DNA of 64,000 bases from Mustelus asterias (taxonomy: Eukaryota): the NCBI RefSeq assembly GCF_964213995.1, contig NC_135830.1, forward strand, positions 19,344,001 through 19,408,000. Reading direction: 5' to 3'. The notes under the pieces are model-generated. The model was given only the letters and a program-made list of their open reading frames with translations, was not told where the DNA came from and ran no database searches. The position numbers were made by a program, and so were the translations under genes. The stretch's first letter is position 1; every line of letters starts with the position of its first letter. Shown one piece after another: positions 19,320 to 54,785 of the stretch.

Positions 19320-19580
19320 CTTAGTCACAAGTAAGGCCTACATTAACAGTGCAATGAAGTTACTGTGAAATTCCCCTAGTCGCCAAAGTCCGGCGTCTGT
19401 TGGGCGTCAATGCACCCTAACCAGCACGTCTTTCAGAATGCGGAAGGAAACCGGAGCACCCGGAGAAATCCCACGCAGACACGGGGAGAACGTGCAAACT
19501 CAGTGACCCAAGCAGGGAATCAAACCCGCGTCCCTGGTTTTGTGAGGCAGCAGTAGTAACTACTGTGCTACGTGCCGCCC
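19320..19580 (-). mobile_element. V-SINE containing the left breakpoint of the tandem array
   Basis: Reverse V-domain GGAAACCGGAGCACCCGGAG...CACGCAGACACGGGGAGAACGTGCAAACT and head ...CGTGCCGCCC. Confidence 0.8.
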
Positions 19581-19771
19581 ACTCATTCTGACTTACATGT
19601 AATCACTTCCATTTCTTCAAATGCAGTTCCAGCTCTCTTCGTTTTAATCTTTTTAAAATTTTCTGATGCAAGATATGTTTTCCTCTTTCCCCTCACCCTG
19701 GGGATTTAATACCGCGCTTCTTAAACTGCTGATAATTCAGGCATGGCGGAGCGTGTTTTGAAAACGGTGCA

Positions 19772-19810
19772 GGTTTTTGTACGAGATCTCCCTGTGTTTG
19801 CAACACTGTG
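19772..19810 (-). promoter_or_regulatory. 23-RSS of array V1
   Basis: CACAGTG-23-ACAAAAACC, perfect consensus. Confidence 0.95.
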
Positions 19811-20143
19811 CCTCACGGCGCAAAGATAGGTGGCAGCGTCTGAAACCTGTACGCCTCTCACAGTCAGGATGCTGAGTTTGTTGCTTTCAACGATCGAAGC
19901 AGTGATCCTCCCATGTTGATCCGTTCCTCTTGTGGCCATCACCAGATGCTGGGGTGACTGATTCGGGAGCTGTTTGTACCAACGCAGGATCTCAAACGTA
20001 ATGGAGATGGTGCAGTTCATGGATACATTTCTCGCTTCACTGACAACCATCCGTGGAGGGAGCTGCAGCAACTCAGCTTCTCCGGTCACCCCCGTACAGA
20101 TCAGAGTGAAAAACAACAAAACGTCGATGCAAATCTTGAGCAT
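19811..20143 (-). CDS. Intronless TCR alpha-like V segment, copy 1 (leader and V in one exon)
   Basis: MLKICIDVLLFFTLICTGVTG-EAELLQ..MNC TISITFEILR WYKQ..DAATYLCAVR; conserved Cys/Trp/Cys; abuts a 23-RSS. Confidence 0.92.
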
Positions 20144-22210
20144 TCTCCGTTAACACGCAACACCGAGATCAGCTTAGAATCAGGAGATGAAAGTTAACTG
20201 GGAGGTAAATGCTTTCTTCGTGTCCAGTTTAGTGCCGTGTTTCTGTTGAACTAACAACAGTAGGCGGGTTCTCCTTTAACCATCTACACTGAGCGCTTAA
20301 CACTGATACCAGCTCACACAGCATTTAAGCACTCACCTGACCCGCCCAGATTAAATATTTCTCATGCCTCACACTGCTCTCTGCTGGTGCATGCTGGTAG
20401 TTGCAGGGTGCACTTCTTCACTTGGACTGTCGACAAGTTGCAATTCACAAGATAGTTGCAAATGAGAACAGTTGTTTACTCTTTCCTGTTATAGACCTTT
20501 TATTGCGGGAGAGCTTACAACTCTCGTTTATTCTACTATCCAACGATTGCAATGTATTTTCCCCTCTCATTCTTGCTGAAGTTTTATTCCACACTGTGAC
20601 CAGTCCTGGTGTGACAAGAAGAAGGCCCAGATGTTAGTCCTAAAATATCGTTCGATAATTTAGGAACTTGTGTAATGGGAACTGGTCTATCTATCGAATA
20701 TTTGTTACATAACAACAGGAATGGCAACATTGAAAATTCATAAGAATATTTTTTTAAATAACAAGTTTGATATCAGTGTTATAATTATGTTTCCGTTTCC
20801 TCATTTGTTCCTCCAAACAGATTTTCTTCAACAAAGACACTCGCTCCGATATTGAACTTAATTCAGTGTCCTGCCCTCTCCTGGGGGCAAAAAGCACTAC
20901 AATATACAACTTTAAAACAACCTGCAGCACTTTTGGAACCAAGATTGTTTCCAGCAATTGCCGATGATACACTTTCCCCAGTATGAAGTATATTTTTCAT
21001 TTTTCTTCTTTTTAAATGCGCCTGGTGGTACCGAACCTGACCTTCATTATTGCAACTCATTGATCATCCGGTGTTGCAACATTTTCTTCAGAGCGGAGTC
21101 ATGGAAATTGTGTCACTCCGCCCCTTTCCTCAGGAGTTCAGATAAATAGAAAATAGATTACTTTAAAATCTCCTTCTAATACAAGATGCGAGTTGGGGGG
21201 ATACTGCTTGAAATACAGCAGTGTTCATTCTGACAAAATACACGATTGATTGTGATGATTTAGCAGTTTGCCAAAACCGACTTCTTCGCAACCCGACATT
21301 TTGAAAAAACACCATTATGTTAGCCAACTCTGGGCTGCAGCTGAGCAAAGATGCCGTTGAATCCTGCGTCCAAACTCTCACAGCGTTGGAAACCAGTTGA
21401 ACCCTGGTACAGGTACTTCCCCAGCTTTGTAGATCAAATCCCCAGCCTCCTGCGGCCAATTATAAGGGCGAGAAGATGTGAAGGCTATCTGGACTAACCA
21501 ATCCGTTACCGTGAACAGGATGTTTTGAATAAGAATGCTGCGAAAATTGCAAGTGATCAAGATTCTAAAATCAGGGACTACATGCGGAGTCCACCCACTC
21601 TCATTCTGCGTAAATCTATTAAACAGTCAGTTCCGTCCCTCCATTTATCCGATTTTAAGGATGATGTTTGGCTATTTACCGCATTGTTATAGTCAATTCC
21701 CTCAGGACTCAGTGACCTCTTGCATCAGCTACGGGGAGCTTTCACAGTCAGAGAGCAGCTCTTTTAATTTGGGTTCCGGTCATGATCCAGGAACAACATT
21801 GCCTGATTTAAAAATAAAAGCAAATCACTGCTGATGCTGGAATCTGAAGCCGAAAGAGAAAATGCTGGAAAATCTCAACAGGTCTGGAAGCATCTGTGAG
21901 GAGAGAAAAGAGCGGACGTTTCGAGTCCAGATGACCCTTTGCCAAAGCTAAAAGGCATAGAAAGTGGGAGATATTGCTGTGAGGCAGCAGTAGTAACTGC
22001 TGTGCTACCGTGCCGCCCACTCATTCTGACTTACATGTAACCGCTTCCATTTTCTTCAAAAGCAGTTCCAGCTCTCTTCGTTTTAACCTTTTAAAAATTT
22101 TCTGATTCAAGATATGTTTTGCTCTTTCCCCTTACCCTGGGGGTTTAATACCGCGCTTCTTAAATTGTTGGTGTTTCAGGCATGGCGGAGCGTGTTTTGA
22201 AAACGGTGCA

Positions 22211-22249
22211 GGTTTTTGTACGAGATCTCCCTGTGTTTGCAACACTGTG
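22211..22249 (-). promoter_or_regulatory. 23-RSS of array V2
   Basis: CACAGTG-23-ACAAAAACC. Confidence 0.95.
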
Positions 22250-22582
22250 CCTCATGGCGCAAAGATAGGTGGCAGCGTCTGAAACCTGTACGTCTCTCAC
22301 GGTCAGGATGCTGAGTTTGTTGCTTTCAACGATCGAAGCAGTGATCCTCCCATGTTGATCGGTTCCTCTTGTGGCCATCACCAGATGCTGGGGTGACTGA
22401 TTCGGGAGCTGTTTGTACCAACGCAGGGTCTGTAACGTACTGGAGATGGTACAGTTCATGGATACATTTCCCGCTTCACTGACAACCATCCGTCGAGGGA
22501 GCTGCAGCAACTCAGCTTCTCCGGTCACCCCCGTACAGATCAGAGTGAAAAACAACAAAAAGTCGATGCAAATCTTGAGCAT
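22250..22582 (-). CDS. Intronless TRAV-like segment, copy 2
   Basis: CDR1 ISSTLQTLR; ends YLCAMR. Confidence 0.92.
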
Positions 22583-24669: not shown

Positions 24670-24708
24670 GGTTTTTGTACGAGATCTCCCTGTGTTTGCA
24701 ACACTGTG
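24670..24708 (-). promoter_or_regulatory. 23-RSS of array V3
   Basis: CACAGTG-23-ACAAAAACC. Confidence 0.95.
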
Positions 24709-25041
24709 CCTCATGGCGCAAAGATAGGTGGCAGCGTCTGAAACCTGTACGTCTCTCACGGTCAGGATGCTGAGTTTGTTGCTTTCAACGATCGAAGCAG
24801 TGATCCTCCCATGTTGATCGGTTCCTCTTGTGGCCATCACCAGATGCTGGGGTGACTGATTCGGGAGCTGTTTGTACCAACGCAGGGTCTGTAACGTACT
24901 GGAGATGGTACAGTTCATGGATACATTTCCCGCTTCACTGACAACCATCCGTGGGGGGAGCTGCAGCAACTCAGCTTCTCCGGTCACCCCCGTACAGATC
25001 AGAGTGAAAAACAACAAAAAGTCGATGCAAATCTTGAGCAT
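24709..25041 (-). CDS. Intronless TRAV-like segment, copy 3
   Basis: CDR1 ISSTLQTLR; ends YLCAMR. Confidence 0.92.
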
Positions 25042-27129: not shown

Positions 27130-27168
27130 GGTTTTTGTACGAGATCTCCCTGTGTTTGCAACACTGTG
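27130..27168 (-). promoter_or_regulatory. 23-RSS of array V4
   Basis: CACAGTG-23-ACAAAAACC. Confidence 0.95.
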
Positions 27169-27501
27169 CCTCACGGCGCAAAGATAGGTGGCAGCGTCTG
27201 AAACCTGTACGTCTCTCACGGTCAGGATGCTGAGTTTGTTGCTTTCAACGATCGAAGCAGTGATCCTCCCATGTTGATCGGTTCCTCTTGTGGCCATCAC
27301 CAGATGCTGGGGTGACTGATTCGGGAGCTGTTTGTACCAACGCAGGGTGTTAAACGTAATGGAGATGGTACAGTTCATGGATACATTTCCCGCTTCACTG
27401 ACAACCATCCGTGGAGGGAGCTGCAGCAACTCAGCTTCTCCGGTCACCCCCGTACAGATCAGAGTGAAAAACAACAAAACGTCGATGCAAATCTTGAGCA
27501 T
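27169..27501 (-). CDS. Intronless TRAV-like segment, copy 4
   Basis: CDR1 ISITFNTLR; ends YLCAVR. Confidence 0.92.
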
Positions 27502-29579: not shown

Positions 29580-29618
29580 GGTTTTTGTACGAGATCTCCC
29601 TGTGTTTGCAACAGTGTG
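29580..29618 (-). promoter_or_regulatory. 23-RSS of array V5 (variant heptamer)
   Basis: CACACTG-23-ACAAAAACC. Confidence 0.9.
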
Positions 29619-29951
29619 CCTCTCGGCGCAAAGATAGGTGGCAGCGTCTGAAACCTGTACGTCTCTCACGGTCAGGATGCTGAGTTTGTTGCTTTCAACG
29701 ATCGAAGCAGTGATCCTCCCGTGTTGATCGGTTCCTCTTGTGGCCATCACCAGATGCTGGGGTGACTGATTCGGGAGCTGTTTGTACCAACGCAGGGTGT
29801 TAAACGTAATGGAGCCGGTGCAGTTCATGGATACATTTCCCGCTTCACTGACAACCATCCGTGGAGGGAGCTGCAGCAACTCAGCTTCTCCGGTCACCCC
29901 CGTACAGATCAGAGTGAAAAACAACAAAAAGTCGATGCAAACCTTGAGCAT
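29619..29951 (-). CDS. Intronless TRAV-like segment, copy 5
   Basis: CDR1 GSITFNTLR; ends YLCAER. Confidence 0.92.
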
Positions 29952-30524: not shown

Positions 30525-30857
30525 TCTCGGCCTTTTGGCTAAGATCAAGTGTATGGACGGCAGCCCATGGTCGGCCGCACTTGGTCGAGGTCATTAGATT
30601 ACGCTGAGGCTTCATATGTTTCATATGAAGCAATTTTTAAAAGCGGCATCTCGGCCTTTTGGCTAAGATGCAAATGAGCTCAAGTCTTGGAGGAGGAACC
30701 TCCCCCTTCTCCAATCAGCTTGGCTCATGTAGATCAGGCCCAGGACAGGGTGGTTTGGTCGCTCGCCCTGTCTTGTCAGCCTGGATCTGAAATGTCTCAA
30801 CTTGTTGAGACTCTGAATTGGATTTGATTTGATTGAATTGGAAAAGTATTTTAAAAA
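30525..30857 (+). mobile_element. U2 snRNA-headed SINE-like retroposon with target-site duplication
   Basis: Starts with U2 nt 7-35 (TCTCGGCCTTTTGGCTAAGATCAAGTGTA). A second U2 nt 7-27 copy is at 30649-30669. Short A tail. TSD (A)TTAGTCACATAACAAC at 30508-30524 and 30858-30874. Absent from the 11 sibling units. Confidence 0.9.
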
Positions 30858-31200
30858 ATTAGTCACATAACAACAGGAATGGCAACATTGAAAATTCACA
30901 AGAATATTTTTTAAAATAACAAGTTTGATATCAGTGTTATAACTATGTTTCCGTTTCCTCATTTGTTGCACCAAACAAATTTTCTTCAATAAAGACAGTG
31001 GCTCCGATATTGAACTTAATTCAGTGTCCTTCTGCCCTCTCCTGGGGTCAAAAGGCACTACAATATACAACTTTAAAACAACCTGCTGCACTTTTGGAAC
31101 CAAGATTGATTCCAACAATTGCCGAACATACACTTTCCCCAGTATGAAGTATATTTTTCATTTATCTTCTTTTGGAATGCGCCTGGTAGTATCGAACCTG

Positions 31201-33350
31201 AACAAAGAACAAAGAACAAAGAACAGTACAGCACAGGAAACAGGCCCTTCGGCCCTCCAAGCCTGTGCCGCCCCTTGGTCCAACTAGACCAATCGTTTGT
31301 ATCCCTCCATTCCCAGGCTGCTCATGTGACTATCCAGGTAAGTCTTAAACGATGTCAGCGTGCCTGCCTCCACCACCCTACTTGGCAGCGCATTCCAGGC
31401 CCCCACCACCCTCTGTGTAAAAAACGTCCCTCTGATGTCTGAGTTATACTTCGCCCCTCTCAGCTTGAGCCCGTGACCCCTCGTGATCGTCACCTCCGAC
31501 CTGGGAAAAAGCTTCCCACTGTTCACCCTATCTATACCCTTCATAATCTTGTACACCTCTATTAGATCTCCCCTCATTCTCCGTCTTTCCAAGGAGAACA
31601 ACCCCAGTCTACCCAATCTCTCCTCATAGCTAAGACCCTCCATACCAGGCAACATCCTGGTAAACCTTCTCTGCACTCTCTCCAATGCCTCCACGTCCTT
31701 CTGGTAGTGCGGCGACCAGAACTGGACGTAGTACTCCAAATGTTGCCTAACCAGCGTTCTATACAGCTGCATCATCAGACTCCAGCTTTTATACTCTATA
31801 CCCCGTCCTATAAAGGCAAGCATACCATATGCCTTCTTCACCACCTTCTCCACCTGTGTTGCCACCTTCAAGGATTTGTGGACTTGCACACCGAGGTCCC
31901 TCTGTGTTTCTATACTCCTGATGACTCTGCCATTTATTGTATAACTCCTCCCTACATTATTTCTTCCAAAATGCATCACTTCGCATTTATCCGGATTAAA
32001 CTCCATCTGCCACCTCTCCGCCCAATTTTCCAGCCTATCTATATCCTGCAGTATTGCCCGACAATGCTCGTCGCTATCCGCAATTCCAGCCATCTTCGTG
32101 TCATCCGCAAACTTGCTGATTACACCAGTTACACCTTCTTCCAAATCATTTATATATATCACAAATAGCAGAGGTCCCAGTACAGAGCCCTGCGGAACAC
32201 CACTGGTCACAGACCTCCAGCCGGAAAAAGACCCTTCGACCACTACCCTCTGTCTCCTATGGCCAAGCCAGTTCTCCACCCATCTAGCCACTTCTCCTTG
32301 TATCCCATGAGCCTTAACCTTCTTAACCAACCTGCCATGTGGGACTTTGTCAAATGCCTTACTGAAATCCATATAGACGACATCCACGGCCCTTCCTTCA
32401 TCAACCGTTTTTGTTACTTCCTCAAAAAACTCCACCAAATTTGTAAGGCACCACCTCCCTCTTACAAAACCATGCTGTCTGTCACTAATGAGATTGTTCC
32501 GTTCTAAATGCACATACATCCTGTCTCTAAGAATCCTCTCCAACAACTTCCCTACCACGGACGTCAAGCTCACCGGCCTATAATTTCCTGGGTTATCCCT
32601 GCTACCCTTCTTAAACAACGGGACCACATTCGCTATCCTCCAATCCTCAGCGACCTCACCCATGTCCAAAGAAGCGACAAAGATTTCCGTCAGAGGCCCA
32701 GCAATTTCACCTCTCGTCTCCCTGAGCAGTCGAGGATAGATGCCATCAGGCCCTGGGGCTTTGTCAGTTTTAATGTTCCCTAAAAAACCTAACACTTCCT
32801 CTCTTGTAATGGAGATTTTCTCTAACGGGTCAACACCTCCCTCCGAGACACTCCCGGTTAACACGCCCCTCTCCTTCGTGAATACCGATGCAAAGTATTC
32901 ATTTAGGATCTCCCCTATTCCCTTGGGTTCTAAGCATAATTCCCCTCCTTTGTCCCTGAGAGGTCCGATTTTCTCCCTGACAACTCGTTTGTTCCGAACG
33001 TATGAAAAGAATGCCTTAGGATTCTCCTTAATCCTGCCTGCCAAGAACATCTCGTGACCTCTTTTTGCCCTTCGAACTCCCCGTTTGAGATCTTTCCTAC
33101 TCTCTCTGTATTCCTCCAGAGCTCCATCTGTTTTCAGTTGCCTGGACTTCACGTACGCCTCCCTTTTCAATTTAATCAGATCCTCAATTTCCCTGGTTAT
33201 CCACGGCGCTCGAAATCTACCGTTCCTATCTTTCCTTTTTACAGGCACATGCCTATCCTGCAGCCTTATCAATAGTTCCTTAAAAGACTCCCACAGGCCA
33301 GACGCGGACTTACCCACGAACATCCTCTCCCAATCAACATCCACCAATTC
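31201..33350 (-). mobile_element. 5'-truncated young CR1 LINE inserted in array unit 5; open RT frame from about 33350 to 31284
   Basis: About 690 aa uninterrupted, with PGPDG, NYRPVSLTS, QHGF, DFSKAFD, GVPQGSVLGP, KFADDTK. (AACAAAG)n tail. Flanked by CCTGA on both sides; sibling units read GAACCTGACTTTC. Confidence 0.95.
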
Positions 33351-34542
33351 CTGACTTTCATTATTGCAACTCATTGATCATCCGGTGCTGCAACATTTTC
33401 TTCAGAGCGGAGTCATGGAAATTGTGTCACTCCGCCCCTTTCCTCAGGACTTCAGATAAATGGAAAATAGATGACTTTAAAATTTCCTTCTAATACAAGA
33501 TGCGAGTTGGGGGGGATATTGGTAATTGGGTCTAACAGCTTGAAATACAGCAGTGTTAATTCTGACGAAATACACGATTGATTGTGATGATCAAGCAGTT
33601 TGCCAAAACCGACTTCTTCGCAACCCGACATTTTGAAAAAACACCATTATGTTAGCCAACTCTGGGCTGCAGCTGAGCAAAGCTGCCGCTTAAACCTGCG
33701 TCCAAACTCTCACAGCGTTGGAAACCAGTTGAACCCTGGTACAGGTACTTCCCCAGCTTTGTAGATCAAATCCCCAGCCTACTGCGGTCAATTATAAGGG
33801 CGAGCAGATGTGAAGGTTGTCTGGGCTAACCAATCCGTTACTGTGAACACGATGTTTTGAATAAGAATGCTGCGAAAATTGCAAGTGATCAAGATCCTAA
33901 AATCAGGGACTACATGCGGAGTCCACCCACTCTCATTCTCCGTAAATCTATGAAACAGCCAGTTCCATCCCTCCATTTATCCGATTTAAAGGATGATGCT
34001 TGGCTATTTACCGCATTGTTATAGTCAATTCCCTCAGGACTCTGTGACCTCTTGCATCAGCTACGGGGAGCTTTCACAGTCAGAGAGCAGCTCTTTTAAT
34101 TTGGGTTCCGGTTATGATCCAGGAACAACATTGCCTGATTTAAAAATAAAAGCAAATCACTGCGGATGCTGGAATCTGAAGCAGAAAGAGAAAATGCCGG
34201 AAAATCTCAACAGGTCTGGAAGCATCTGTGAGGAGAGAAAAGAGCTGACGTTTCGAGTCCAGATGCCCCTTTGCCAAAGCTAAAAGGCATAGAAAGTGGG
34301 AGATATTGCTGTGAGGCAGCAGTAGTAACTGCTGTGCTACCGTGCCGCCCACTCATTCTGACTTACATGTAACCGCTTCCATTTTCTTCAAAAGCAGTTC
34401 CAGCTCTCTTCGTTTTAACCTTTTAAAAATTTTCTGATTCAAGATATGTTTTGCTCTTTCCCCTTACCCTGGGGATTTAATACCGCGCTTCTTAAATTGT
34501 TGGTGTTTCAGGCATGGCGGAGCGTGTTTTGAAAACGGTGCA

Positions 34543-34581
34543 GGTTTTTGTACGAGATCTCCCTGTGTTTGCAACAGTGTG
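34543..34581 (-). promoter_or_regulatory. 23-RSS of array V6 (variant heptamer)
   Basis: CACACTG-23-ACAAAAACC. Confidence 0.9.
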
Positions 34582-34914
34582 CCTCACGGCGCAAAGATAG
34601 GTGGCAGCGTCTGAAACCTGTACGTCTCTCACGGTCAGGATGCTGAGTTTGTTGCTTTCAACGATCGAAGCAGTGATCCTCCCATGTTGATCGGTTCCTC
34701 TTGTGGCCATCACCAGATGCTGGGGTGACTGATTCGGGAGCTGTTTGTACCAACGCAGGGTCTGTAACGTACTGGAGATGGTACAGTTCATGGATACATT
34801 TCCCGCTTCACTGACAACCATCCGTGGAGGGAGCTGCAGCAACTCAGCTCCTCCGGTCACCCCCGTACAGATCAGAGTGAAAAACAACAAAAAGTCGATG
34901 CAAATCTTGAGCAT
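34582..34914 (-). CDS. Intronless TRAV-like segment, copy 6
   Basis: CDR1 ISSTLQTLR; ends YLCAVR. Confidence 0.92.
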
Positions 34915-37003: not shown

Positions 37004-37042
37004 GGTTTTTGTACGAGATCTCCCTGTGTTTGCAACAGTGTG
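37004..37042 (-). promoter_or_regulatory. 23-RSS of array V7 (variant heptamer)
   Basis: CACACTG-23-ACAAAAACC. Confidence 0.9.
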
Positions 37043-37375
37043 CCTCTCGGCGCAAAGATAGGTGGCAGCGTCTGAAACCTGTACGCCTCTCACAGTCAGG
37101 ATGCTGAGTTTGTTGCTTTCAGCGATCGAAGCAGTGATCCTCCCGTGTTGATCGGTTCCTCTTGTGGCCATCACCAGATGCTGGGGTGACTGATTCGGGA
37201 GCTGTTTGTACCAACGCAGGGTGTTAAACGTAATGGAGCTGGTACAGTTCATGGATACATTTCCCGCTTCACTGACAACCATCCGTGGAGGGAGCTGCAG
37301 CAACTCAGCTTCTCCGGTCACCCCCGTACAGATCAGAGTGAAAAACAACAAAAAGTCGATGCAAATCTTGAGCAT
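37043..37375 (-). CDS. Intronless TRAV-like segment, copy 7
   Basis: CDR1 SSITFNTLR; ends YLCAER. Confidence 0.92.
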
Positions 37376-37950: not shown

Positions 37951-40770
37951 CTAAACCAATTTCTTTTCGTCCATGAACCTATCTACGGATCTCTTAAACG
38001 CCCCCAAACTAGGCGCATTTACGACTGATGTTGGCAGGGCATTCCAATCCCTCACCACCCTCTGGGTAAAGAACCTACCCCTGACATCGGTTCTATAACT
38101 ACCCCCCCTCAATTTAAAGCCATGCCCCCTCGTGCTGGATTTCTCCATCAGAGGAAAAAGGCTATCACTATCCACCCTATCTAAACCTCTAATCATCTTA
38201 TATATTTCAATAAGATCCCCTCTTAGCCGCCGCCTTTCCAGCGAAAACAATCCCAAATCCCTCAGCCTCTCCTCATAGGATCTCCCCTCCATACCAGGCA
38301 ACATCCTGGTAAACCTCCTCTGCACCCTCTCCAAAGCCTCCACATCCTTCCTGTAATGTGGGGACCAGAACTGCACACAGTACTCCAAGTGCGGCCGCAC
38401 CAGAGTTGTGTACAGTTGCAACATAACGCTACGACTCCTAAATTCAACCCCCCTACCAATAAACGCCAAGACACCATATGCCTTCTTAACAACCTTATCT
38501 ACTTGATTCCCAACTTTCAGGGATCTATGCACACATACACCTAGATCCCTCTGCTCCTCCACACTATTCAAAGTCCTCCCGTTAGCCCTATACTCAACAC
38601 ATCTGTTATTCCTACCAAAGTGAATTACCTCACACTTCTCCGCATTAAACTCCATCCGCCACCTCTCGGCCCAACTTTGCAACCTGTCTAAGTCTTCCTG
38701 CAAACTACGACACCCTTCCTCACTGTCTACCACACCACCGACTTTGGTGTCATCAGCAAATTTGCTAATCCACCCAACTATACCCTCATCCAGATCATTA
38801 ATAAATATTACAAACAGCAGTGGCCCCAGAACAGATCCCTGAGGTACACCACTTGTAACCGCACTCCATGATGAATATTTACTATCAACCACCACCCTCT
38901 GTTTCCTATCCGCTAGCCAATTCCTGATCCAATTTCCTAGATCACCCCCAATCCCATACATCTGCATTTTCTGCAGAAGCCTACCATGGTGAACCTTATC
39001 AAACGCCTTACTAAAATCCATATATACCACGTCCACTGCCTTGCCCCCATCCACCTCCTTGGTCACTTTCTCAAAAAACTCAATAAGGTTAGTAAGGCAC
39101 GACCTACCTGCCACAAAACCATGCTGACTATCACCTATCAATTCATTACTCTCCAAATAACTATAAATCCTATCCCTTATAATTTTTTCCAACATCTTGC
39201 CGACAACAGAAGTGAGACTCACCGGTCTATAATTCCCGGGGAAGTCTCTGTTCCCCTTCTTAAACAATGGGACAACATTCGCTAACCTCCAATCTTCTGG
39301 TACTATACCAGAGGCCAACGACGACCTGAAGATCAGAGCCAGAGGCTCTGCAATCACTTCTCTTGCCTCCCAGAGAATCCTTGGATAAATCCCATCCGGA
39401 CCAGGGGATTTATCTATTTTCAGACCCTCCAGAATATCCTGCACATCCTCCTTATCAACTGTAATACTGTCTATTCTACTCCCCTGCAACCCAGTGTCCT
39501 CCTCAGCTATATTCATGTCCCCTTGCGTGAACACCGAAGAGAAATATTGGTTCAATGCTTCACCAATCTCCTCCGGTTCCACACATAACTTCCCTCTGCC
39601 ATCTATAACTGGCCCTAAACTTGCCCTAACCAACCTTCTGTTCTTGACATACCTATAGAACGCCTTAGGATTCTCTTTAACCCTATCCGCCAAAGTCTTC
39701 TCATGTCCCCTTTTAGCCCTTCTAAGCTCGCTCTTCAACTCCCTCTTAGCCAATCTAAAGCTTTCTAGTGCACTACCCGAGTGCTCACGTCTCATCCGAA
39801 CATAAGCCTCCTTTTTCTTTTTAACCAACAAAGAAACTTTTTTGGTGCACCACGGTTCCCTAGCCCTACCAATTCCTCCTTGCCTGACAGGGACATACCT
39901 ATCACAGACTCGCAGTAGCTGCTCCTTGAAAAAACTCCACATGTCGGACGTTCCCAGTCCCTGTAATCTCCTAGTCCAACCTATGTTTCCTAATTCTCTC
40001 CTAATAGCCTCATAATTACCCTTCCCCCAGCTAAAACCACTGGCCCGAGGTTCATGCCTATCCCTTTCCATCACTAAGGTGAACGTAACCGAATTGTGGT
40101 CACTATCACCAAAATGCACACCAACTTCCAAGTCTAGCACCTGGTCTGGCTCATTTCCCAGCACCAGATCCAATATAGCCTCACCTCTAGTTGGCCTGTC
40201 TACATACTGAGTCAAAAAACCTTCCTGCACGCTTTGAACAAAAACTGACCCCTCTAACGAGCTAGAGCTATAACAATTCCAGTCAATATTAGTCAAGTTA
40301 AAATCCCCCATAACAATTGCCCTATTACTTTCACTCCTAAGCAGGATTGACTCCGCAATCCTTTCCTCAACCTCTCTAGAACTTTTAGGAGGTCTATAAA
40401 AGACTCCCAACAGGGTGACCTCTCCTCTCCTATTTCTAATCTCCGCCCATACTACCTCAACAGATAAGTCCTCATCAAACCTCCTCTCTGACACTGTGAT
40501 ACAATCTCTGACCAATAATGCTACCCCTCCCCCTCTTCTACCTCCTTCCCTACTTCGACTAAAACATTTGAACCCCGGGACCTGCAGCATCCATTCCTGC
40601 CCCTGCTCTATCCATGTCTCTGAAATAGCCACAACATCGAAGTCCCAGGTACTGATCCACGCTGCAAGTTCACCCACTTTATTGCGAATACTCCTGGCAT
40701 TGAAGTATACACATTTCAAACCCTGCTCCACCCCACCTCTGCAATGCCGTGCATTGCAGTCCCCATCCAT
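37951..40770 (-). CDS. CR1 LINE ORF2: APE endonuclease plus reverse transcriptase (939 aa, intact)
   Basis: YFNARSI, ISETW, GGGVAL, YRPP, MGDFN, ILDLVL, GDSDH (APE); QHGF, DFSKAFD, PQGSVLGP, FADD (RT). Confidence 0.95.
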   Translation of the reverse strand: MDGDCNARHCRGGVEQGLKCVYFNARSIRNKVGELAAWISTWDFDVVAISETWIEQGQEWMLQVPGFKCFSRSREGGRRGGGVALLVRDCITVSERRFDEDLSVEVVWAEIRNRRGEVTLLGVFYRPPKSSREVEERIAESILLRSESNRAIVMGDFNLTNIDWNCYSSSSLEGSVFVQSVQEGFLTQYVDRPTRGEAILDLVLGNEPDQVLDLEVGVHFGDSDHNSVTFTLVMERDRHEPRASGFSWGKGNYEAIRRELGNIGWTRRLQGLGTSDMWSFFKEQLLRVCDRYVPVRQGGIGRAREPWCTKKVSLLVKKKKEAYVRMRREHSGSALESFRLAKRELKSELRRAKRGHEKTLADRVKENPKAFYRYVKNRRLVRASLGPVIDGRGKLCVEPEEIGEALNQYFSSVFTQGDMNIAEEDTGLQGSRIDSITVDKEDVQDILEGLKIDKSPGPDGIYPRILWEAREVIAEPLALIFRSSLASGIVPEDWRLANVVPLFKKGNRDFPGNYRPVSLTSVVGKMLEKIIRDRIYSYLESNELIGDSQHGFVAGRSCLTNLIEFFEKVTKEVDGGKAVDVVYMDFSKAFDKVHHGRLLQKMQMYGIGGDLGNWIRNWLADRKQRVVVDSKYSSWSAVTSGVPQGSVLGPLLFVIFINDLDEGIVGWISKFADDTKVGGVVDSEEGCRSLQEDLDRLQSWAERWRMEFNAEKCEVIHFGRNNRCVEYRANGRTLNSVEEQRDLGVCVHRSLKVGNQVDKVVKKAYGVLAFIGRGVEFRSRSVMLQLYTTLVRPHLEYCVQFWSPHYRKDVEALERVQRRFTRMLPGMEGRSYEERLRDLGLFSLERRRLRGDLIEIYKMIRGLDRVDSDSLFPLMEKSSTRGHGFKLRGGSYRTDVRGRFFTQRVVRDWNALPTSVVNAPSLGAFKRSVDRFMDEKKLV

Positions 40771-40822
40771 GCATCCCTCACTTTCAGCCCCACTACTCAG
40801 GATCCCTCCCCCCCCCCCCGAA

Positions 40823-41434
40823 TCAGTTTAAACCTCCCTGCATGGCCTTAGCAAATTTACCCCCCAGGATATTGGTCCCCTTCTGATTAAGGTGTAGACC
40901 ATCCTTCTCATAGAGGTCACACCTTCCCCAGTACGAGCCCCAATTGCTTAAGTACCTGAACCCCTCCCTCCTGCACCATCCCCTCAGCCATGAATTCAAA
41001 CCTTCCCTCTCCCTATTGCTCTCTAAACTATCCCGTGGTACAGGCAAGAGTCCAGAGATAACCACTCTGTCAGTCTTGGCCTTTAGTTTCCACCCCAACT
41101 CCATAAATCCCTGCCTAATATCCCCTTCCCCTATCCTCCCTATGTCGTGTGTCCCCACATGTACAATAACTTGTGGTTTATCTCCCTCCCCCCTAAGAGT
41201 CCTGAATACCCTGTCAGACACATCCCGGACCCCAGCCCCTGGTAGGCAACACACCAACCCTGAGTCCCTACCTTTAGTTCCGACCCTCCTATCTGTCCCC
41301 TTAATTGTGGAGTCCCCAATCACAAGGCCCAGTCTTTTACAGCCCCTAACCACCTGAGCTTTCTCACTCGGCTCACCCCCAGAGATCTGCTCTCTATGCT
41401 CAGTTGATTCCTCCTCAACTGTAGCCTCCAGCAC
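40823..41434 (-). CDS. CR1 LINE ORF1 C-terminal part, SGNH/GDSL esterase-like domain (5'-truncated)
   Basis: LVIGDS, CLPGA, VHVGTHD, DGLHLN blocks. Confidence 0.88.
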   Translation of the reverse strand: MLEATVEEESTEHREQISGGEPSEKAQVVRGCKRLGLVIGDSTIKGTDRRVGTKGRDSGLVCCLPGAGVRDVSDRVFRTLRGEGDKPQVIVHVGTHDIGRIGEGDIRQGFMELGWKLKAKTDRVVISGLLPVPRDSLESNREREGLNSWLRGWCRREGFRYLSNWGSYWGRCDLYEKDGLHLNQKGTNILGGKFAKAMQGGLN

Positions 41435-43067
41435 CGAAAACCTATTATGGAGGCCCAGATGTTAGTCCTAAAATAGCGTTCGATAATTTGGGAAGTTGTG
41501 TGATGGGAACTGGTCTATCTATCGAATATTTGTTACATAACCACAGGAATGGCAAACATTGAAAACGCATAAGAATATTTTTTTTAAATAATAAGTTTGA
41601 TATCAGTGTTGTAATTATGTTTCTGTTTCCTCACATGTTCCTTCAATCAAATTTTCTTCAATAAAGACACTCGCTCTGATATTGAACTTAATTCAGTGTC
41701 CTTCTGCCCTCTTTGAAACAACCTGCTCCGCTTCTGGAACCAAGATTGTTTCCAACAATTGCCGATCATGCACTTTCCCCAGCATGAAGTATATTTTTCA
41801 TTTTTCTTCTTTTGGAATGCGCCTGGTGGTATCGAACCTGACTTTAATTATTGCAACTCATTGATCATCCGGTGTTCCAACATTTTCTTCAGATCGGAGT
41901 CATGGATATTGTGTCACTCCGCCCCTTTCCTCAGGAACTCAGATGAATGGAAAATAGATGACTTTAAAATCTCTTTCAAATACAAGATGCGAGTTGGGGG
42001 CGGATATTGGTAACTGGGTCTAACAGCTTGAAATACAGCAGTGTTAATTCTGACAAAATACACGATTCATTCTGATGATCAAGCAGTTTGCCAAAACCGA
42101 CTTCTTCGCAACCCGACGTTTTGAAAAAACACCATTATGTTAGCCAACTCTGGGCTGCAGCTGAGCAAAGCTGCCGCTTAAACCTGCGTCCAAACTCTCA
42201 CAGCGTTGGAAACCAGTTGAACCCTGGTACAGGTACTTCCCCAGCTTTGTAGATCAAATCCCCAGCCTACTGCCGTCAATTATAAGGGCGAGCAGATGTG
42301 AAGGTTGTCTGGGCTAACCAATCCGTTACCGTGAACAGGATGTTTTGAATAAGAATGCTGCGAAAATTGCAAGTGATCAAGATTCTAAAATCAGGGACTA
42401 CATGCGGAGTCCACCCACTCTCATTCTGCGTAAATCTATTAAACAGCCAGTTCCATCCCTCCATTTATCCGATTTAAAGGATGAAGCTTGGCTATTTACC
42501 GCATTGTTATAGTCAATTCCCTCAGGACTCAGTGACCTCTTGCATCAGCTACGGGGAGCTTTCACAGTCAGAGAGCAGCTCTTTTAATTTGGGTTCCGGT
42601 TATGATCCAGGAACAACATTGCCTGATTTAAAAATAAAAGCAAATCACTGCGGATGCTGGAATCTGAAGCCGAAAGAGAAAATGCTGGAAAATCTCAACA
42701 GGTCTGGAAGCATCTGTGAGGAGAGAAAAGAGCTGACGTTTCGAGTCCAGATGACCCTTTGCCAAAGCTAAAAGGCATAGAAAGTGGGAGATATTGCTGT
42801 GAGGCAGCAGTAGTAACTGCTGTGCTACCGTGCCGCCCACTGATTCTGACTTACATGTAACCGCTTCCATTTTCTTCGCAAGCAGTTCCAGCTCTCTTCG
42901 CTTTAACCTTTTAAAAATTTTCTGATTCAAGATATGTTTTGCTCTTTCCCCTTACCCTGGGAATTAATACCGCGCTTCTTAAAATGCTGATATTTCAGGC
43001 ATGGCGGAGCGTGTTTTGAAAACGGTGCAGGTTTTTGTACGAGATCTCCCTGTGTTTGCAACAGGGA

Positions 43068-43400
43068 GATCTCGGCGCAAAGATAGGTGGCAGCGTCTGA
43101 AACCTGTACGTCTCTCACGGTCAGGATGCTGAGTTTGTTGCTTTCAACGATCGAAGCAGTGATCCTCCCATGTTGATCCGTCCCTCTTGTGGCCATCACC
43201 AGATGCTGGGGTGACTGATTCGGGAGCTGTTTGTACCAACGCAGGGCCTGTAACGTAATGGAGCTGGTACAGTTCATGGATACATTTCCCGCTTCACTGA
43301 CAACCATCCGTGGAGGGAGCTGCAGCAACTCTGCTTCTCCGGTCACCCCCGTACAGATCAGAGTGAAAAACAACAAAAAGTCGATGCAAATCCGGAGCAT
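43068..43400 (-). pseudogene. Intronless TRAV-like segment, copy 8; open frame but RSS heptamer destroyed
   Basis: CDR1 SSITLQALR. The nonamer (43030-43038) and spacer are intact, but the heptamer position reads ACAGGGAGATCTCG on the plus strand, leaving no CAC on the coding strand. Confidence 0.88.
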
Positions 43401-45492: not shown

Positions 45493-45531
45493 GGTTTTTG
45501 TACGAGATCTCCCTGTGTTTGCAACAGTGTG
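45493..45531 (-). promoter_or_regulatory. 23-RSS of array V9 (variant heptamer)
   Basis: CACACTG-23-ACAAAAACC. Confidence 0.9.
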
Positions 45532-45864
45532 CCTCTCGGCGCAAAGATAGGTGGCAGCGTCTGAAACCTGTACGTCTCTCACGGTCAGGATGCTGAGTTT
45601 GTTGCTTTCAACGATCGAAGCAGTGATCCTCCTGTGTTGATCCGTTCCTCTTGTGGCCATCACCAGATGCTGGGGTGACTGATTCGGGAGCTGTTTGTAC
45701 CAATGCAGGATCTGAAACGTAATGGAGCCGGTGCAGTTCATGGATACATTTCCTGCTTCACTGACAATCATCAGTGGAGGGAGCTGCAGCAACTCAGCTT
45801 CTCCGGTCACCCCCGTACAGATCAGAGTGAAAAACAACAAAAAGTCAATGCAAATCTTGAGCAT
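45532..45864 (-). CDS. Intronless TRAV-like segment, copy 9
   Basis: ATG at 45864; CDR1 GSITFQILH; ends YLCAER. Confidence 0.92.
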
Positions 45865-47954: not shown

Positions 47955-47993
47955 GGTTTTTGTACGAGATCTCCCTGTGTTTGCAACAGTGTG
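47955..47993 (-). promoter_or_regulatory. 23-RSS of array V10 (variant heptamer)
   Basis: CACACTG-23-ACAAAAACC. Confidence 0.9.
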
Positions 47994-48326
47994 CCTCTCG
48001 GCGCAAAGATAGGTGGCAGCGTCTGAAACTTGTACGTCTCTCACGGTCAGGATGCTGAGTTTGTTGCTTTCAGCGATCGAAGCAGTGATCCTCCCGTGTT
48101 GATCGGTTCCTCTTGTGGCCATCACCAGATGCTGGGGTGACTGATTCGGGAGCTGTTTGTACCAACGCAGGGTCTGAAACGTAATGGAGCTGGTACAGTT
48201 CATGGATACATTTCCCGCTTCACTGACAACCATCCGTGGAGGGAGCTGCAGCAACTCAGCTTCTCCGGTCACCCCCGTACAGATCAGAGTGAAAAACAAC
48301 AAAAAGTCGATGCAAACCTTGAGCAT
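47994..48326 (-). CDS. Intronless TRAV-like segment, copy 10
   Basis: CDR1 SSITFQTLR; ends YLCAER. Confidence 0.92.
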
Positions 48327-50415: not shown

Positions 50416-50454
50416 GGTTTTTGTACGAGATCTCCCTGTGTTTGCAACAGTGTG
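50416..50454 (-). promoter_or_regulatory. 23-RSS of array V11 (variant heptamer)
   Basis: CACACTG-23-ACAAAAACC. Confidence 0.9.
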
Positions 50455-50787
50455 CCTCTCGGCGCAAAGATAGGTGGCAGCGTCTGAAACCTGTACGTCT
50501 CTCACGGTCAGGATGCTGAGTTTGTTGCTTTCAACGATCGAAGCAGTGATCCTCCCATGTTGATCCGTTCCTCTTGTGGCCATCACCAGATGCTGGGGTG
50601 ACTGATTCGGGAGCTGTTTGTACCAATGCAGGGCCTGTAACGTAATGGAGCTGGTACAGTTCATGGATACATTTCCCGCTTCACTGACAACCATCCGCGG
50701 AGGGAGCTGCAGCAACTCAGCTTCTCCGGTCACCCCCGTACAGATCAGAGTGAAAAACAACAAAAATTCGATGCAAATCTTGAGCAT
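50455..50787 (-). CDS. Intronless TRAV-like segment, copy 11
   Basis: CDR1 SSITLQALH; ends YLCAER. Confidence 0.92.
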
Positions 50788-52876: not shown

Positions 52877-52915
52877 GGTTTTTGTACGAGATCTCCCTGT
52901 GTTTGCAACAGTGTG
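52877..52915 (-). promoter_or_regulatory. 23-RSS of array V12 (variant heptamer)
   Basis: CACACTG-23-ACAAAAACC. Confidence 0.9.
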
Positions 52916-53248
52916 CCTCTCGGCGCAAAGATAGGTGGCAGCGTCTGAAACCTGTACGTCTCTCACGGTCAGGATGCTGAGTTTGTTGCTTTCAACGATC
53001 GAAGCAGTGATCCTCCCATGTTGATCCGTTCCTCTTGTGGCCATCACCAGATGCTGGGGTGACTGATTCGGGAGCTGTTTGTACCAATGCAGGGTCTGAA
53101 ACGTAATGGAGCCGGTGCAGTTCATGGATACATTTCCCGCTTCATTGACAACCATCCGTGGAGGGAACTGCAGCAACTCATCTTCTCCGGTCACCCCCGT
53201 ACAGATCAGAGTGAAAAACAACAAAAAGTCGATGCAAATCTTGAGCAT
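52916..53248 (-). CDS. Intronless TRAV-like segment, copy 12
   Basis: CDR1 GSITFQTLH; ends YLCAER. Confidence 0.92.
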
Positions 53249-54295
53249 TCTCAGTTAACACGCAGCACGGAGATCAGCTGAGAACCAGGAGATGAAAGTT
53301 AACCGGGAGGCAAATGCTTTCTTCGTGTCCAGTTTAGTGCCGTGTTTCTGTTGAACTAACAACAGGAGGCGGGTTCTCCTTTAACCATCCACACTGAGCG
53401 CTTAACACTGATACCAGCTCACATCGCCTTTGAGCATTCACCTGACCCGCCCAGATTAAATATTTCTCATGCCTCACACTGCTCTCTGCCGGTGCATACT
53501 GGTAATTGCAGGGTGCAATTCTTCACTTGGACTGTCGACAAGTTGCAATTCACAAGATAGTTGCAAATGAGAACAGTTGTTTACTCTTTCCTGTTATAGA
53601 CCTTTTATTGCGGGAGAGCTTACAACTCTCGTTTATTCTACTATCCAACGATTGCAAGATATTTTCCCCTCTCATTCTTGCTTAAGTTTTATTCCACACT
53701 GTGACCAGTCCCGGTGTGACAAGAAGGAGGCCCAGATGTTAGTCCTAAAATATCGTTCCAATAATTTGGGAACTTGTGTAATGGGAACTGGTCTATCTAT
53801 CGAATATTTGTTACATAACCACAGGAATGGCAACATTGAAAACTCATAAGAATATTTTTTAAAGTAACAAGTTGGATATCAGTGTTATAATTATGTTTCC
53901 GTTTCCTCATTTGTTCCTTCAAACAAATTTTCTTCAATAAAGACACTCACTCCAACATTGAACTTAATTCAGTGTCCTTCTGCCCTCTCCTGGGGTCAAA
54001 AGGCACTGCAATTTACAACTTTCAAACAACCTGCTCCACTTTTGGAAACAAGATTGTTTCCAACAATTGCCGATCATACACTTTCCCCAGTATGAAGTAT
54101 CAGGGACGACATGCGGAGTCCACCCACTCTCACACTGCGTAAATCTATTAAACAGCCAGTTCCATCCATCCATTTATCCGATTTAAAGGATGACTCAGTG
54201 TCCTCTTGCATCAGCGACGGGGAGCTTTCACAGTCAGAGAGCAGCTCTTTTAATTTGGGTTCTGGTTATGATCCAGGAACAACATTGCCTGATTT

Positions 54296-54785
54296 AAAAA
54301 TAAAAGCAAATCACTGCGGATGCTGGAATCTGAAGCCGAAAGAGAAAATATTGGAAAATCTCAACACGTCTGGAAGCATCTGTGAGGAGAGAAAAGAGCT
54401 GACGTTTCGAGTCCAGATGACCCTTTGCCAAAGCTAAAAGGCATAGAAAGTGGGAGATATTTCTGCTCTTCGGTGAGGGAATGAAAAATGAGTCATTGCC
54501 ACGAAAACAAGGGGAAAGGCTGCGACTGGCAGCCCATACAGAGAATAGAAGGTGTGAATAGCCAAACGGCAGACAAGCTGAAATCAGAGGGCAAGTTGTG
54601 ACAGATGAAAACGTGGGGGTGAGGTGGGAGACAGATAAAATTGCGAGAAAGGGGGAAAAGGGAAGCAAAGAGAGAGAAAAGGTAAGAGAAGGATGATAAA
54701 ATGGGGGAAAGAGTGGGGGGTGGTTTAAAGAAAGACAACAAAGAAATAAAAGTTAGAGAACAGTTAAAAATTAAATAAAATTAAC
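54296..54785. mobile_element. Penelope-like element terminal-repeat fragment containing the right breakpoint of the array
   Basis: AAAGCAAATCACTGCGGATGCTGGAATCTGAA...GACGTTTCGAGTCCAGATGACCC (hammerhead-like on minus strand) followed by a purine-rich tract. Only the first ~165 bp is repeated in the internal units. Family assignment is from recall. Confidence 0.55.

What the first reader, a model, noticed from the sequence alone, without database searches (positions are those of the whole stretch)
19539..54461. Amplified family of intronless, RSS-bearing TCR V genes (12 tandem copies)
Seen: every array gene runs from ATG through leader and V to the RSS in one 333-nt frame. The junction ...TGT ACG G|GG GTG ACC GGA is exactly a 52-nt L-part1 plus an 11-nt L-part2, with no GT/AG remnant. 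The neighbouring V genes with a readable leader have a 34-52 nt leader exon and a phase-1 intron. The array genes show no poly(A), no TSD and no pre-joined D/J, and keep a germline 23-RSS. Known: the split leader is near-universal in Ig/TCR V genes. The marsupial TCR-mu Vj is intronless but pre-joined; I also recall single-exon V-alpha families in some tetrapods, unverified. Inference: precise intron loss, for example by recombination with cDNA of a sterile germline V transcript, or an ancient intronless V-alpha lineage, followed by a recent 12-fold expansion. CR1 RT is abundant in this window as a possible source.
Basis: partly seen in the sequence, partly recalled or inferred. Interest (0 to 1): 0.85.

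Follow-up and report, generated by a model that had tools for sequence, protein, structure and literature searches.

The report
Shark TCR V genes without leader intron
A cartilaginous-fish genome carries twelve tandem copies of a T-cell-receptor variable gene whose signal peptide and V domain sit in one exon instead of the usual two, a rare exception previously documented for one chicken V-alpha family.

Summary
Window 19541-54465 is a head-to-tail array of about 2.46-kb units on the minus strand. It holds 12 V genes. In 12 of 12, one open 333-nt frame runs from ATG through a 21-residue signal peptide and a V-set domain. In 11 of 12 a 23-spacer RSS follows; copy 43400 has lost its heptamer.

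Three plus-strand neighbour V genes have canonical split leaders of 46, 46 and 52 nt in phase 1. The 52-nt one splits at the same Thr-Gly codon that is continuous in the array genes.

Two public cDNAs of the same V family, apparently from nurse shark, carry the homologous leader without gaps. One is V-J-C-alpha, the other V-D-J-C-beta. So this leader is the one used in mRNA, and the family rearranges.

The V is TRAV-like. Framework regions are under purifying selection and CDR1 is diversified.

The intronless state is shared with other elasmobranch sequences, so it is far older than the amplification (units 94-97% identical).

Single-exon leader+V genes are known for chicken TRAV1 (PMC10972964). 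This is a second, apparently independent case. The scan noted similar families on other pieces of this genome. I found no RNA data for this species.

The parts
19541..54465 (-). Tandem array. It has 11 full units of about 2.46 kb plus partial units at both ends, and holds 12 V genes.
   Evidence: blastn of unit 22583-25041 against the window gives 93.6-97.2% identity for the unit-length matches and the large piece behind the CR1 insertion, and 85-97% for the shorter pieces beside insertions and at the array's upper end. The junction motif occurs 12 times.
52877..53248 (-). V gene 1: ATG, leader and V (333 nt) plus 23-RSS with heptamer CACACTG
50416..50787 (-). V gene 2: single-exon L-V plus 23-RSS (CACACTG)
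47955..48326 (-). V gene 3: single-exon L-V plus 23-RSS (CACACTG)
45493..45864 (-). V gene 4: single-exon L-V plus 23-RSS (CACACTG)
43030..43400 (-). V gene 5: the L-V frame is open, but the heptamer is destroyed. It is replaced by the reverse complement of part of the spacer and is 1 nt shorter. The gene is probably unable to rearrange.
37004..37375 (-). V gene 6: single-exon L-V plus 23-RSS (CACACTG)
34543..34914 (-). V gene 7: single-exon L-V plus 23-RSS (CACACTG)
29580..29951 (-). V gene 8: single-exon L-V plus 23-RSS (CACACTG)
27130..27501 (-). V gene 9: single-exon L-V plus 23-RSS (CACAGTG)
24670..25041 (-). V gene 10, the reference copy. Leader 24979-25041, V region 24709-24978, heptamer 24702-24708, spacer 24679-24701, nonamer 24670-24678.
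   Evidence: Pfam V-set E 3.1e-12
22211..22582 (-). V gene 11: single-exon L-V plus 23-RSS (CACAGTG)
19772..20143 (-). V gene 12: single-exon L-V plus 23-RSS (CACAGTG); last unit, truncated about 230 nt beyond the RSS
37853..41448 (-). CR1-type LINE inserted in one unit only. ORF1 has a GDSL/esterase-like domain. ORF2 is 939 aa with endonuclease and RT domains.
31202..33354 (-). 5'-truncated CR1 copy (696-aa RT ORF) inserted in one unit only
30525..30874 (.). 350-nt SINE-like insertion present in one unit only
55373..56273 (+). Neighbour V with canonical split leader. L-part1 55373-55424 (52 nt), intron 55425-55926, V exon 55927-56234, 23-RSS 56235-56273.
13314..13809 (+). Neighbour V pseudogene with split leader. 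L-part1 13314-13359 (46 nt), GT..AG intron to 13476, V exon with a frameshift and stops, 23-RSS 13771-13809.
18171..18786 (+). Neighbour V, decayed. Candidate L-part1 18171-18216 (46 nt), V exon 18510-18786, no canonical 23-RSS.
60418..61200 (-). Minus-strand V interrupted by an insertion; 24-spacer RSS-like site at 60456

Best explanation
The array is a recently amplified subfamily of functional germline TCR V gene segments of the V-alpha/delta type, in an elasmobranch. Each gene is a compact single exon: its own upstream region, ATG, a 21-residue signal peptide, the V domain, then a 23-RSS. I infer that it works like any other V segment. It is transcribed from its own promoter, and RAG joins it through the 23-RSS to a 12-RSS partner (J-alpha, or a D). 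The only difference is that no leader splice is needed. The leader intron was lost precisely at the canonical phase-1 position. The loss happened long before the amplification, in an ancestor shared with other sharks, and apparently after the split from the chimaera lineage. The most plausible route is recombination with a spliced, reverse-transcribed V transcript; this step is inference. Unequal crossing-over then built the 12-copy array. Selection kept the frameworks and diversified CDR1 and the V end. Shown here: the anatomy, the copy number in this assembly, the RSS state, the selection pattern, and the homology of the leader to cDNA leaders. Inferred: expression and rearrangement in this species, chain type, and the mechanism and date of intron loss.
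For: Anatomy. 12 of 12 frames are open over 333 nt, and 11 of 12 RSSs are intact with a perfect nonamer and an identical 23-nt spacer. The domain is V-set.

Intron position. The neighbour V at 55373 has a 52-nt L-part1 ending Thr-G|ly, the same codon that is continuous in the array genes. The same scan finds 0 candidate L-part1 exons in the 2.1 kb upstream of an array gene, against 1 for each of 3 neighbours.

Leader use and rearrangement. cDNA P0156 is V-J-C. Its C region holds the peptide SKGLLSTN, which is the translation of the nurse-shark C-alpha primer in PMC5931798, and among TCR chains its listed PDB matches are alpha chains; antibody chains rank highest overall. P0156 aligns to the window gene from Met1 to Cys-Ala at 64 of 109 identical residues with 0 gaps. 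cDNA P0022 (V-D-J-C-beta) has the same leader type.

Selection. pN/pS is 0.36 in FR1 and 0.26 in FR3. In CDR1 pN is 0.21 with pS 0, and in the V end pN is 0.17 with pS 0. The exon is more conserved than the flanks: 96.7% mean pairwise identity, against about 95% over whole units.

TRAV type. Almost all of the 60 best PDB matches are TCR alpha chains; about five are antibody constructs. The nearest Atlas clusters are TRAV41, TRAV18 and TRAV9D-3. The nearest non-chondrichthyan in the tree is a paddlefish protein named TVA2.

Age of the intron loss. P0002 comes from JGI/IMG. It is one frame from Met through V and through the RSS-encoded residues, and aligns 1-111 to 1-111. It falls on the other side of the family's deepest split. 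A contig of coded organism C is collinear over window 24842-25066, which includes the leader and ATG, with 0 gaps. In 10 of 17 Callorhinchus gene models of the sister family, homology upstream breaks exactly at the G of GVSG (or DVSG, GVGG) with acceptor-like read-through. Two further models have a proper spliced leader. This is what a split leader with an 11-nt L-part2 would give.
Against: There is no RNA evidence from this species. No listed run is on record as RNA, and the contigs laid cover the intergenic DNA as well, so they behave as DNA. The cDNAs come from another species and are 53-59% identical, so they show the family's behaviour and not that of these 12 genes. Seven of the 11 intact heptamers are CACACTG rather than the consensus, and I did not measure their efficiency. 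The array points the opposite way from three neighbouring V genes, so these genes or those neighbours must rearrange by inversion. The chain type is unsettled: the closest relatives of the nurse-shark C-beta cDNA are three tandem bamboo-shark genes of this same family. That the window lies in the TCR alpha/delta region rests on unverified scan notes plus the published IgH-TCR-alpha/delta linkage (PMC12227049). The unspliced nature of P0002 rests on my recollection that JGI/IMG metagenome genes are called without splicing. The Callorhinchus argument is read from protein models only.
Confidence: 0.78

Rival explanations
1. The array genes are V-beta (TRBV) segments, not V-alpha/delta. The family, or this branch of it, sits in the TCR beta locus and joins to D-beta.
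For: P0022 belongs to this V family and is joined through a D-like insert and a J (FGAGTKLTVLE) to a C region. The first 28 residues of that C region are identical to those of ADW95893.1, 'T-cell receptor beta chain [Ginglymostoma cirratum]'. The C region also aligns to mouse C-beta. A 23-RSS fits V-beta as well as V-alpha.
Against: The window genes are closer to the C-alpha cDNA P0156 (59%) than to P0022 (53%). In the tree the beta-linked branch is nested inside the orectolobiform clade, and the window genes are sister to that whole clade. The V is TRAV-like by PDB and Atlas. Unverified scan notes place IgM relics and NAR-TCR/TCR-delta on the same sequence piece, as published for the elasmobranch TCR alpha/delta region.
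Confidence: 0.15
2. The in-frame ATG and leader are not used. A separate upstream leader exon is spliced into the V, so the genes only look intronless.
For: A T-rich leader resembles a polypyrimidine tract, and AG dinucleotides follow it. There is no RNA from this species.
Against: Two cDNAs of the family start with the homologous Met-leader and align without gaps. The ATG is kept in 12 of 12 copies, with an A at -3 and an in-frame stop three codons upstream in the copy I read. Codons 17-21 never vary. A scan that recovers the neighbours' L-part1 exons finds none in the 2.1 kb upstream of an array gene.
Confidence: 0.04
3. The array is a dead or non-rearranging amplification: V relics carried along by segmental duplication.
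For: One copy has lost its heptamer. Seven have a non-consensus heptamer. Several neighbouring V genes are pseudogenes. CR1 and SINE elements have landed inside the array.
Against: 12 of 12 frames are open despite about 5% divergence in the flanks. Frameworks have pN/pS of 0.26-0.36, and all CDR1 changes are replacements. The nonamer and spacer are invariant.
Confidence: 0.08
4. The copy number is an assembly artefact, either mis-expanded or collapsed.
For: No read or contig laid spans more than a few hundred bases.
Against: The units differ from one another by 3-6% and carry unit-specific insertions. Identical-repeat misassembly would not produce that.
Confidence: 0.05

Closest known systems
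Chicken TRAV1 (V-alpha-1) gene segments
   Same: They are germline V segments of the alpha type in which the leader peptide and V are encoded in a single exon. They keep an RSS and form a multi-copy family: 48 TRAV1 genes, all but three of them single-exon (PMC10972964, passages; that paper cites Gobel et al. 1994 and Parra & Miller 2012, which I could not open).
   Different: A different lineage with no detectable special relationship. The TRAV1-like (QVQQ) domain of a bird-like protein, P0138, is 26% identical to the window V. P0138's species was not looked up, and 'bird-like' rests on that motif. In a 189-row tree P0138 entered only by its other V domain, which does not group with the shark family. 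An independent loss is therefore likelier. That paper describes the chicken feature as 'uniquely' encoded.
Canonical split-leader V gene segments of Ig and TCR
   Same: V-set domain, signal peptide of normal length, 23-RSS, and presumably their own promoter. Three neighbours in this window are of this kind.
   Different: There is no L-part1/L-part2 intron. A 2025 paper on shark antigen receptors calls the split leader 'canonical' and 'found in all AgR genes' (PMC12227049, passage).
Marsupial TCR-mu Vj
   Same: It lacks the leader intron, and this is attributed to retrotransposition (PMC2275272, passage).
   Different: TCR-mu Vj is already joined to D and J in the germline and has no RSS. The shark genes are unjoined and keep the RSS.
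Nurse-shark germline alpha/delta V segments (Ott et al. 2018)
   Same: Highly similar tandem V genes. Twelve germline segments share more than 93% nucleotide identity (PMC5931798, passage), like the 94-97% between units here.
   Different: The passages I read say nothing about the leader structure of those genes. I could not compare the sequences.

Membership tests
Rearranging antigen-receptor V gene segment | V-set Ig domain with the conserved Cys, Trp and Y-x-C | tested here: met
   Pfam V-set E 3.1e-12, 47.1 bits against a cut-off of 26. C44, W55 and Y106-L-C108 are invariant in the alignments.
Rearranging antigen-receptor V gene segment | RSS (heptamer, 12- or 23-nt spacer, nonamer) abutting the V end | tested here: met
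   11 of 12 copies have CAC-heptamer, 23 nt, then ACAAAAACC. One copy has lost its heptamer.
Rearranging antigen-receptor V gene segment | Split leader (L-part1, phase-1 intron, L-part2 of about 11 nt) | tested here: not met
   One uninterrupted 333-nt frame in 12 of 12 copies. Three neighbours in the window do have the intron. This is the point of the finding. It does not remove the genes from the class, as chicken TRAV1 shows.
Rearranging antigen-receptor V gene segment | Found rearranged to (D)J-C in transcripts | tested here: inconclusive
   Shown only for relatives in another species, P0156 and P0022. No RNA run was found for this species.
TRAV/TRDV (TCR alpha/delta V) | Sequence groups with TRAV rather than TRBV, TRGV or Ig V | tested here: met
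   The best PDB matches are almost all TCR alpha. Atlas gives TRAV41 and TRAV18. In the tree the family is nested among TRAV-like rows and is far from the nurse-shark V-beta of P0153.
TRAV/TRDV (TCR alpha/delta V) | Used with J-alpha/C-alpha (or D/J/C-delta) | tested here: inconclusive
   Relative P0156 is V-J-C-alpha, but relative P0022 is V-D-J-C-beta.
TRAV/TRDV (TCR alpha/delta V) | Lies in the TRA/TRD locus upstream of TRAJ-TRAC | not testable with these tools
   The window holds only V genes and repeats. The only evidence is unverified scan notes of IgM relics 90 kb away and NAR-TCR 12.2 Mb away on the same piece.
Single-exon leader+V TCR V genes (chicken TRAV1 kind) | Leader and V in one exon, with the RSS retained | tested here: met
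Single-exon leader+V TCR V genes (chicken TRAV1 kind) | Common descent with chicken TRAV1 | tested here: inconclusive
   26% identity to a bird-like TRAV1-type domain. In the FastTree run that protein entered only by its other V domain, which does not group with the shark family. Deep V trees are poorly resolved, and no authenticated chicken TRAV1 sequence was at hand.
Retro-processed germline-joined V (TCR-mu Vj kind) | V already joined to D/J in the germline, with no RSS | tested here: not met
   The RSS is present directly after the V end.

The most novel reading that the evidence does not exclude
One and the same single-exon V family feeds both TCR alpha and TCR beta chains in sharks. Two apparently nurse-shark cDNAs have V regions that are roughly 60% identical by my count from a 53% whole-length alignment. 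Their V regions form an exclusive clade among 186 V-domain hits. One is joined to C-alpha and the other, through a D, to C-beta. That would mean a V segment moved between the alpha/delta and beta loci within the shark lineage, or that trans-locus joining occurs. The compact, intron-free, self-contained V unit may be what made the family easy to copy. That would fit the 12-fold array here and the further intronless arrays noted on other pieces of this genome.
Probability: 0.2. Interest if true: 0.7.

Novelty: new member of a known kind. Interest (0 to 1): 0.4.

Why it matters
The split leader is treated as a signature shared by all antigen-receptor V genes, and it is used as an argument in models of their origin (PMC12227049). 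This family is apparently functional, expressed in relatives and under selection, and it lacks the split leader in the oldest living lineage that has RAG-based immunity. So the intron is dispensable for V-gene transcription, rearrangement and secretion signals, and it was lost at least twice (birds and sharks).

There is a practical consequence. V-gene finders that require a leader splice would miss or mis-model these genes, which matters for annotating shark TCR loci and for repertoire sequencing. The chicken study had to modify its finder for this reason.

The alpha/beta sharing of the family, if real, would be the more interesting lead.

Tried and rejected
Tandem Repeats Finder gave 0 rows. 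Its longest period is 500, so it cannot see a 2.46-kb unit, and this is not evidence against the array.

The first word-index protein search found nothing. The exhaustive HMMER search did find relatives.

RNA evidence. The look-up of sequencing runs listed no run on record as RNA. The four runs I laid (X3, X4, X5, X7) behave as DNA, with contigs over the intergenic parts too, so they say nothing on expression.

Two metagenome scans meant to fetch the DNA of P0002 found no relative.

Rfam found no family in the window.

The promoter/terminator scan is for bacterial signals and is irrelevant here.

The conservation profile around the ATG showed no sharply delimited promoter block. Identity is 0.95-0.99 from about -550 to +400.

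Ancient common origin with chicken TRAV1 was considered and not supported.

The retrogene or pre-joined origin is rejected because the RSS is present.

Literature. Six full-text searches found no paper describing single-exon TCR V genes in cartilaginous fish. The library lacks most subscription journals, and Criscitiello et al. 2010, Gobel et al. 1994 and Parra & Miller 2012 are not held. A prior description therefore cannot be excluded. I opened no supplementary files. Fig. S1 and table S1 of PMC12227049 and the supplementary gene tables of PMC10972964 may bear on the leader claims.

What I saw of each paper:
- PMC10972964: passages.
- PMC5931798: passages.
- PMC12227049: passages, plus the start of the abstract in a listing.
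- PMC2275272: passages.
- PMC5278385: passages.
- PMC8456604: one reference-list passage only.

Recalled, from no call: the RSS consensus motifs, the GTAAGT donor consensus, the -3/-1 signal-peptide rule, and that JGI/IMG metagenome genes are called without splicing.

Full report
WHAT IS THERE. The expected count is 0.02, and 0 of 100 shuffles reach 12. The spacing is about 2460 nt, except for two intervals of 4963 and 6025 nt. blastn of one unit against the window delimits the array at 19541-54465. Unit-to-unit identity is 93.6-97.2% for the unit-length matches and the large piece behind the CR1 insertion. The two long intervals are explained by insertions each present in a single unit. These are a 5'-truncated CR1 (31202-33354), a 350-nt SINE-like element (30525-30874), and a 3.6-kb CR1 (37853-41448). 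The last has an ORF1 with a GDSL/esterase-like domain and a 939-aa endonuclease/RT ORF2. Tandem Repeats Finder reported nothing, but its longest period is 500.

In 12 of 12 units an ATG opens a frame of exactly 111 codons. The frame encodes a 21-residue hydrophobic leader, MLKICIDFLLFFTLICTGVTG, with small residues at -3 and -1. It then encodes a V-set domain (Pfam E 3.1e-12) ending ...DAATYLCA-x-R. In 11 of 12 units a heptamer follows directly (4 CACAGTG, 7 CACACTG), then an identical 23-nt spacer and a perfect nonamer ACAAAAACC. In copy 43400 the heptamer has been replaced by the reverse complement of part of the spacer, which gives a perfect inverted repeat and a 1-nt shorter sequence. That copy has probably lost the ability to rearrange.

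IS THE LEADER REALLY UNSPLIT? There are three lines of evidence.

(1) Three plus-strand V genes flanking the array have ordinary split leaders. Their L-part1 exons are 46 nt (13314), 46 nt (18171) and 52 nt (55373), each followed by a GT donor in phase 1. The 52-nt one ends ...TTA ACC G|GTAGGT and resumes after ...TTACAG|GA. Its intron therefore splits a Gly codon that follows Thr17. The array genes read ...TGT ACG G|GG GTG ACC GGA, with Thr17-Gly18 continuous. The array gene is what a spliced transcript of a 52 + 11 nt leader would look like.

(2) The scan that recovers those three L-part1 exons finds 0 candidates in the 2.1 kb between an array gene and the RSS of the preceding copy.

(3) An exhaustive HMMER search gave 917 hits at E<=0.001, followed by a profile search. 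They recovered a tight family: P0002 (JGI/IMG), four bamboo-shark gene models (P0005, P0152, P0154, P0155) and two cDNAs (P0022, P0156). P0156 is V-J-C. Its C region contains SKGLLSTN, the translation given for the nurse-shark C-alpha primer in PMC5931798, and among TCR chains its listed PDB matches are alpha chains. It aligns with the window gene from Met1 to Cys-Ala at 64 of 109 identical residues with no gap. P0022 is V-D-J-C. The start of its C region is identical to ADW95893.1, 'T-cell receptor beta chain [Ginglymostoma cirratum]'. Its leader, MSQIYRFLLLLATLIYTEVTG, is of the same type.

So in relatives the mRNA begins with this very leader, and the V is rearranged. No part of the genomic frame is removed as an intron, and no other leader is spliced in.

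What is missing is RNA from this species. No listed run is on record as RNA, and the four runs laid cover intergenic DNA as well.

ARE THE GENES ALIVE? The flanks differ by about 5%, yet all 12 frames are open. By Nei-Gojobori counts over 66 pairs:
- FR1: pN/pS 0.36.
- FR3: pN/pS 0.26.
- CDR1: pN 0.21 with pS 0.
- The three codons at the V end: pN 0.17 with pS 0.
- Leader codons 17-21: never vary.

This is the pattern of working V genes whose antigen-contact loops are being diversified.

WHICH CHAIN? The V is TRAV-like. Nearly all of the 60 best PDB matches are TCR alpha chains. The nearest Atlas clusters are TRAV41, TRAV18 and TRAV9D-3. In an ML tree the shark family forms a clade with 100/99 support. 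It is joined to Callorhinchus V genes, although the tree tool warns that this is a join of long branches and may be false. The next row out is a paddlefish protein named TVA2. The nurse-shark V-beta of P0153 is the most distant row. The window genes are sister to a clade made of P0002 plus all the orectolobiform sequences. Within that clade the C-alpha cDNA branches first, and the C-beta cDNA groups with three tandem bamboo-shark genes. By parsimony the ancestral use is alpha, and the window array is most likely TRAV (or TRAV/DV). Unverified scan notes place an IgM relic 90 kb away and a NAR-TCR/TCR-delta region 12.2 Mb away on the same sequence piece. This fits the published linkage of IgH genes with TCR alpha/delta in elasmobranchs (PMC12227049). 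I give about 0.15 to the alternative that the array is V-beta.

WHEN AND HOW WAS THE INTRON LOST? P0002 is a single frame from Met through V and through the residues encoded by the heptamer, spacer and nonamer. HSV...TETC corresponds to HSV...TKTC here, with the same length. It is therefore a straight translation of germline DNA, and it lies on the other side of the family's deepest split. A contig of a second coded organism is collinear over the leader and ATG with 0 gaps (record 31). In contrast, 17 Callorhinchus models of the sister family were examined:
- 2 carry a proper signal peptide joined to GVSG.
- 10 diverge upstream of GVSG (or DVSG, GVGG) into acceptor-like read-through such as ...QIVLYLP.
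- 5 have a different N-terminus.

This is what a phase-1 intron before an 11-nt L-part2 would give. The loss is therefore old within elasmobranchs, probably after the split from chimaeras, and much older than the amplification.

The exact preservation of leader length and phase favours recombination with a reverse-transcribed spliced V transcript. That is an inference, nothing in the sequence records the event, and CR1 as the source of reverse transcriptase is speculation. The CR1 copies inside the array arrived after the amplification, since each is in one unit only.

COMPARISON WITH WHAT IS KNOWN. Chicken V-alpha-1 (TRAV1) genes encode leader and V in one exon. All but 3 of 48 do so, and the authors call this unique and had to adapt their V-gene finder (PMC10972964). 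Marsupial TCR-mu Vj lacks the intron too but is germline-joined (PMC2275272). [quoted passage not shown] The shark family shows no special relationship to a bird-like TRAV1-type domain. Identity is 26%. In the 189-row tree that protein entered by its other V domain, which does not group with the family. I therefore read this as a second, independent loss. Six searches found no description of it in cartilaginous fish, but key papers are not in the library. The scan itself noted intronless leader-V families on three other pieces of this genome. I did not check these.

VERDICT. The timing should be revised: an old loss and a recent amplification. The mechanism is untested. It is a new member of a known, rare kind, of moderate interest. 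The more unusual lead is that this V family appears with both C-alpha and C-beta in nurse shark.

Noticed in passing
proteins P0022 and P0156 (public cDNAs, apparently nurse shark): Two members of this one V family are 53% identical over the whole alignment (about 60% over V by my count) and form an exclusive clade. One is joined to C-beta through a D, the other to C-alpha. The beta-linked one groups with three tandem bamboo-shark genes, chiPu_0019058-60.
   Followed up: partly
window 43040-43074 (minus strand): In copy 43400 the RSS heptamer is replaced by the exact reverse complement of 13 nt of the spacer. This makes a perfect hairpin-capable palindrome and looks like a templated mutation.
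   Followed up: partly
window 37853-41448, and 7100-8215: A CR1 element with an intact 939-aa EN/RT ORF and a 203-aa ORF1 that has a GDSL/esterase-like domain. A 371-aa ORF at 7100-8215 is almost identical to its C-terminal part. The family looks recently active.
   Followed up: no
window 24277-24507, repeated in every unit: A short element downstream of each V reaches summed word depths of 10^5-10^6 in public runs, against 10^1-10^3 for the rest of the unit. It is a very abundant SINE-like repeat. Rfam gave no match.
   Followed up: no
window 13314-13809, 18171-18786, 55373-56273 (+) versus 19541-54465 and 60418-61200 (-): V genes of both orientations are interleaved. The whole array is inverted relative to the V genes on both sides of it, so some of these V genes must rearrange by inversion.
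   Followed up: no
window 18787-18820 (+): The decayed V at 18510-18786 is followed by a heptamer-like CACAGAT. An A-rich nonamer-like stretch follows after about 12-14 nt, not 23 nt.
   Followed up: no
window, e.g. 26580-26879, 42481-42771 (+), one per unit: A 96-99-aa plus-strand ORF recurs in most units downstream of the V. It has no Pfam match and is probably only carried along by the repeat.
   Followed up: partly
window 60418-61200 (-): A further V gene is split by an insertion of about 350 nt between FR3 and its end, and has a 24-spacer RSS-like site.
   Followed up: no
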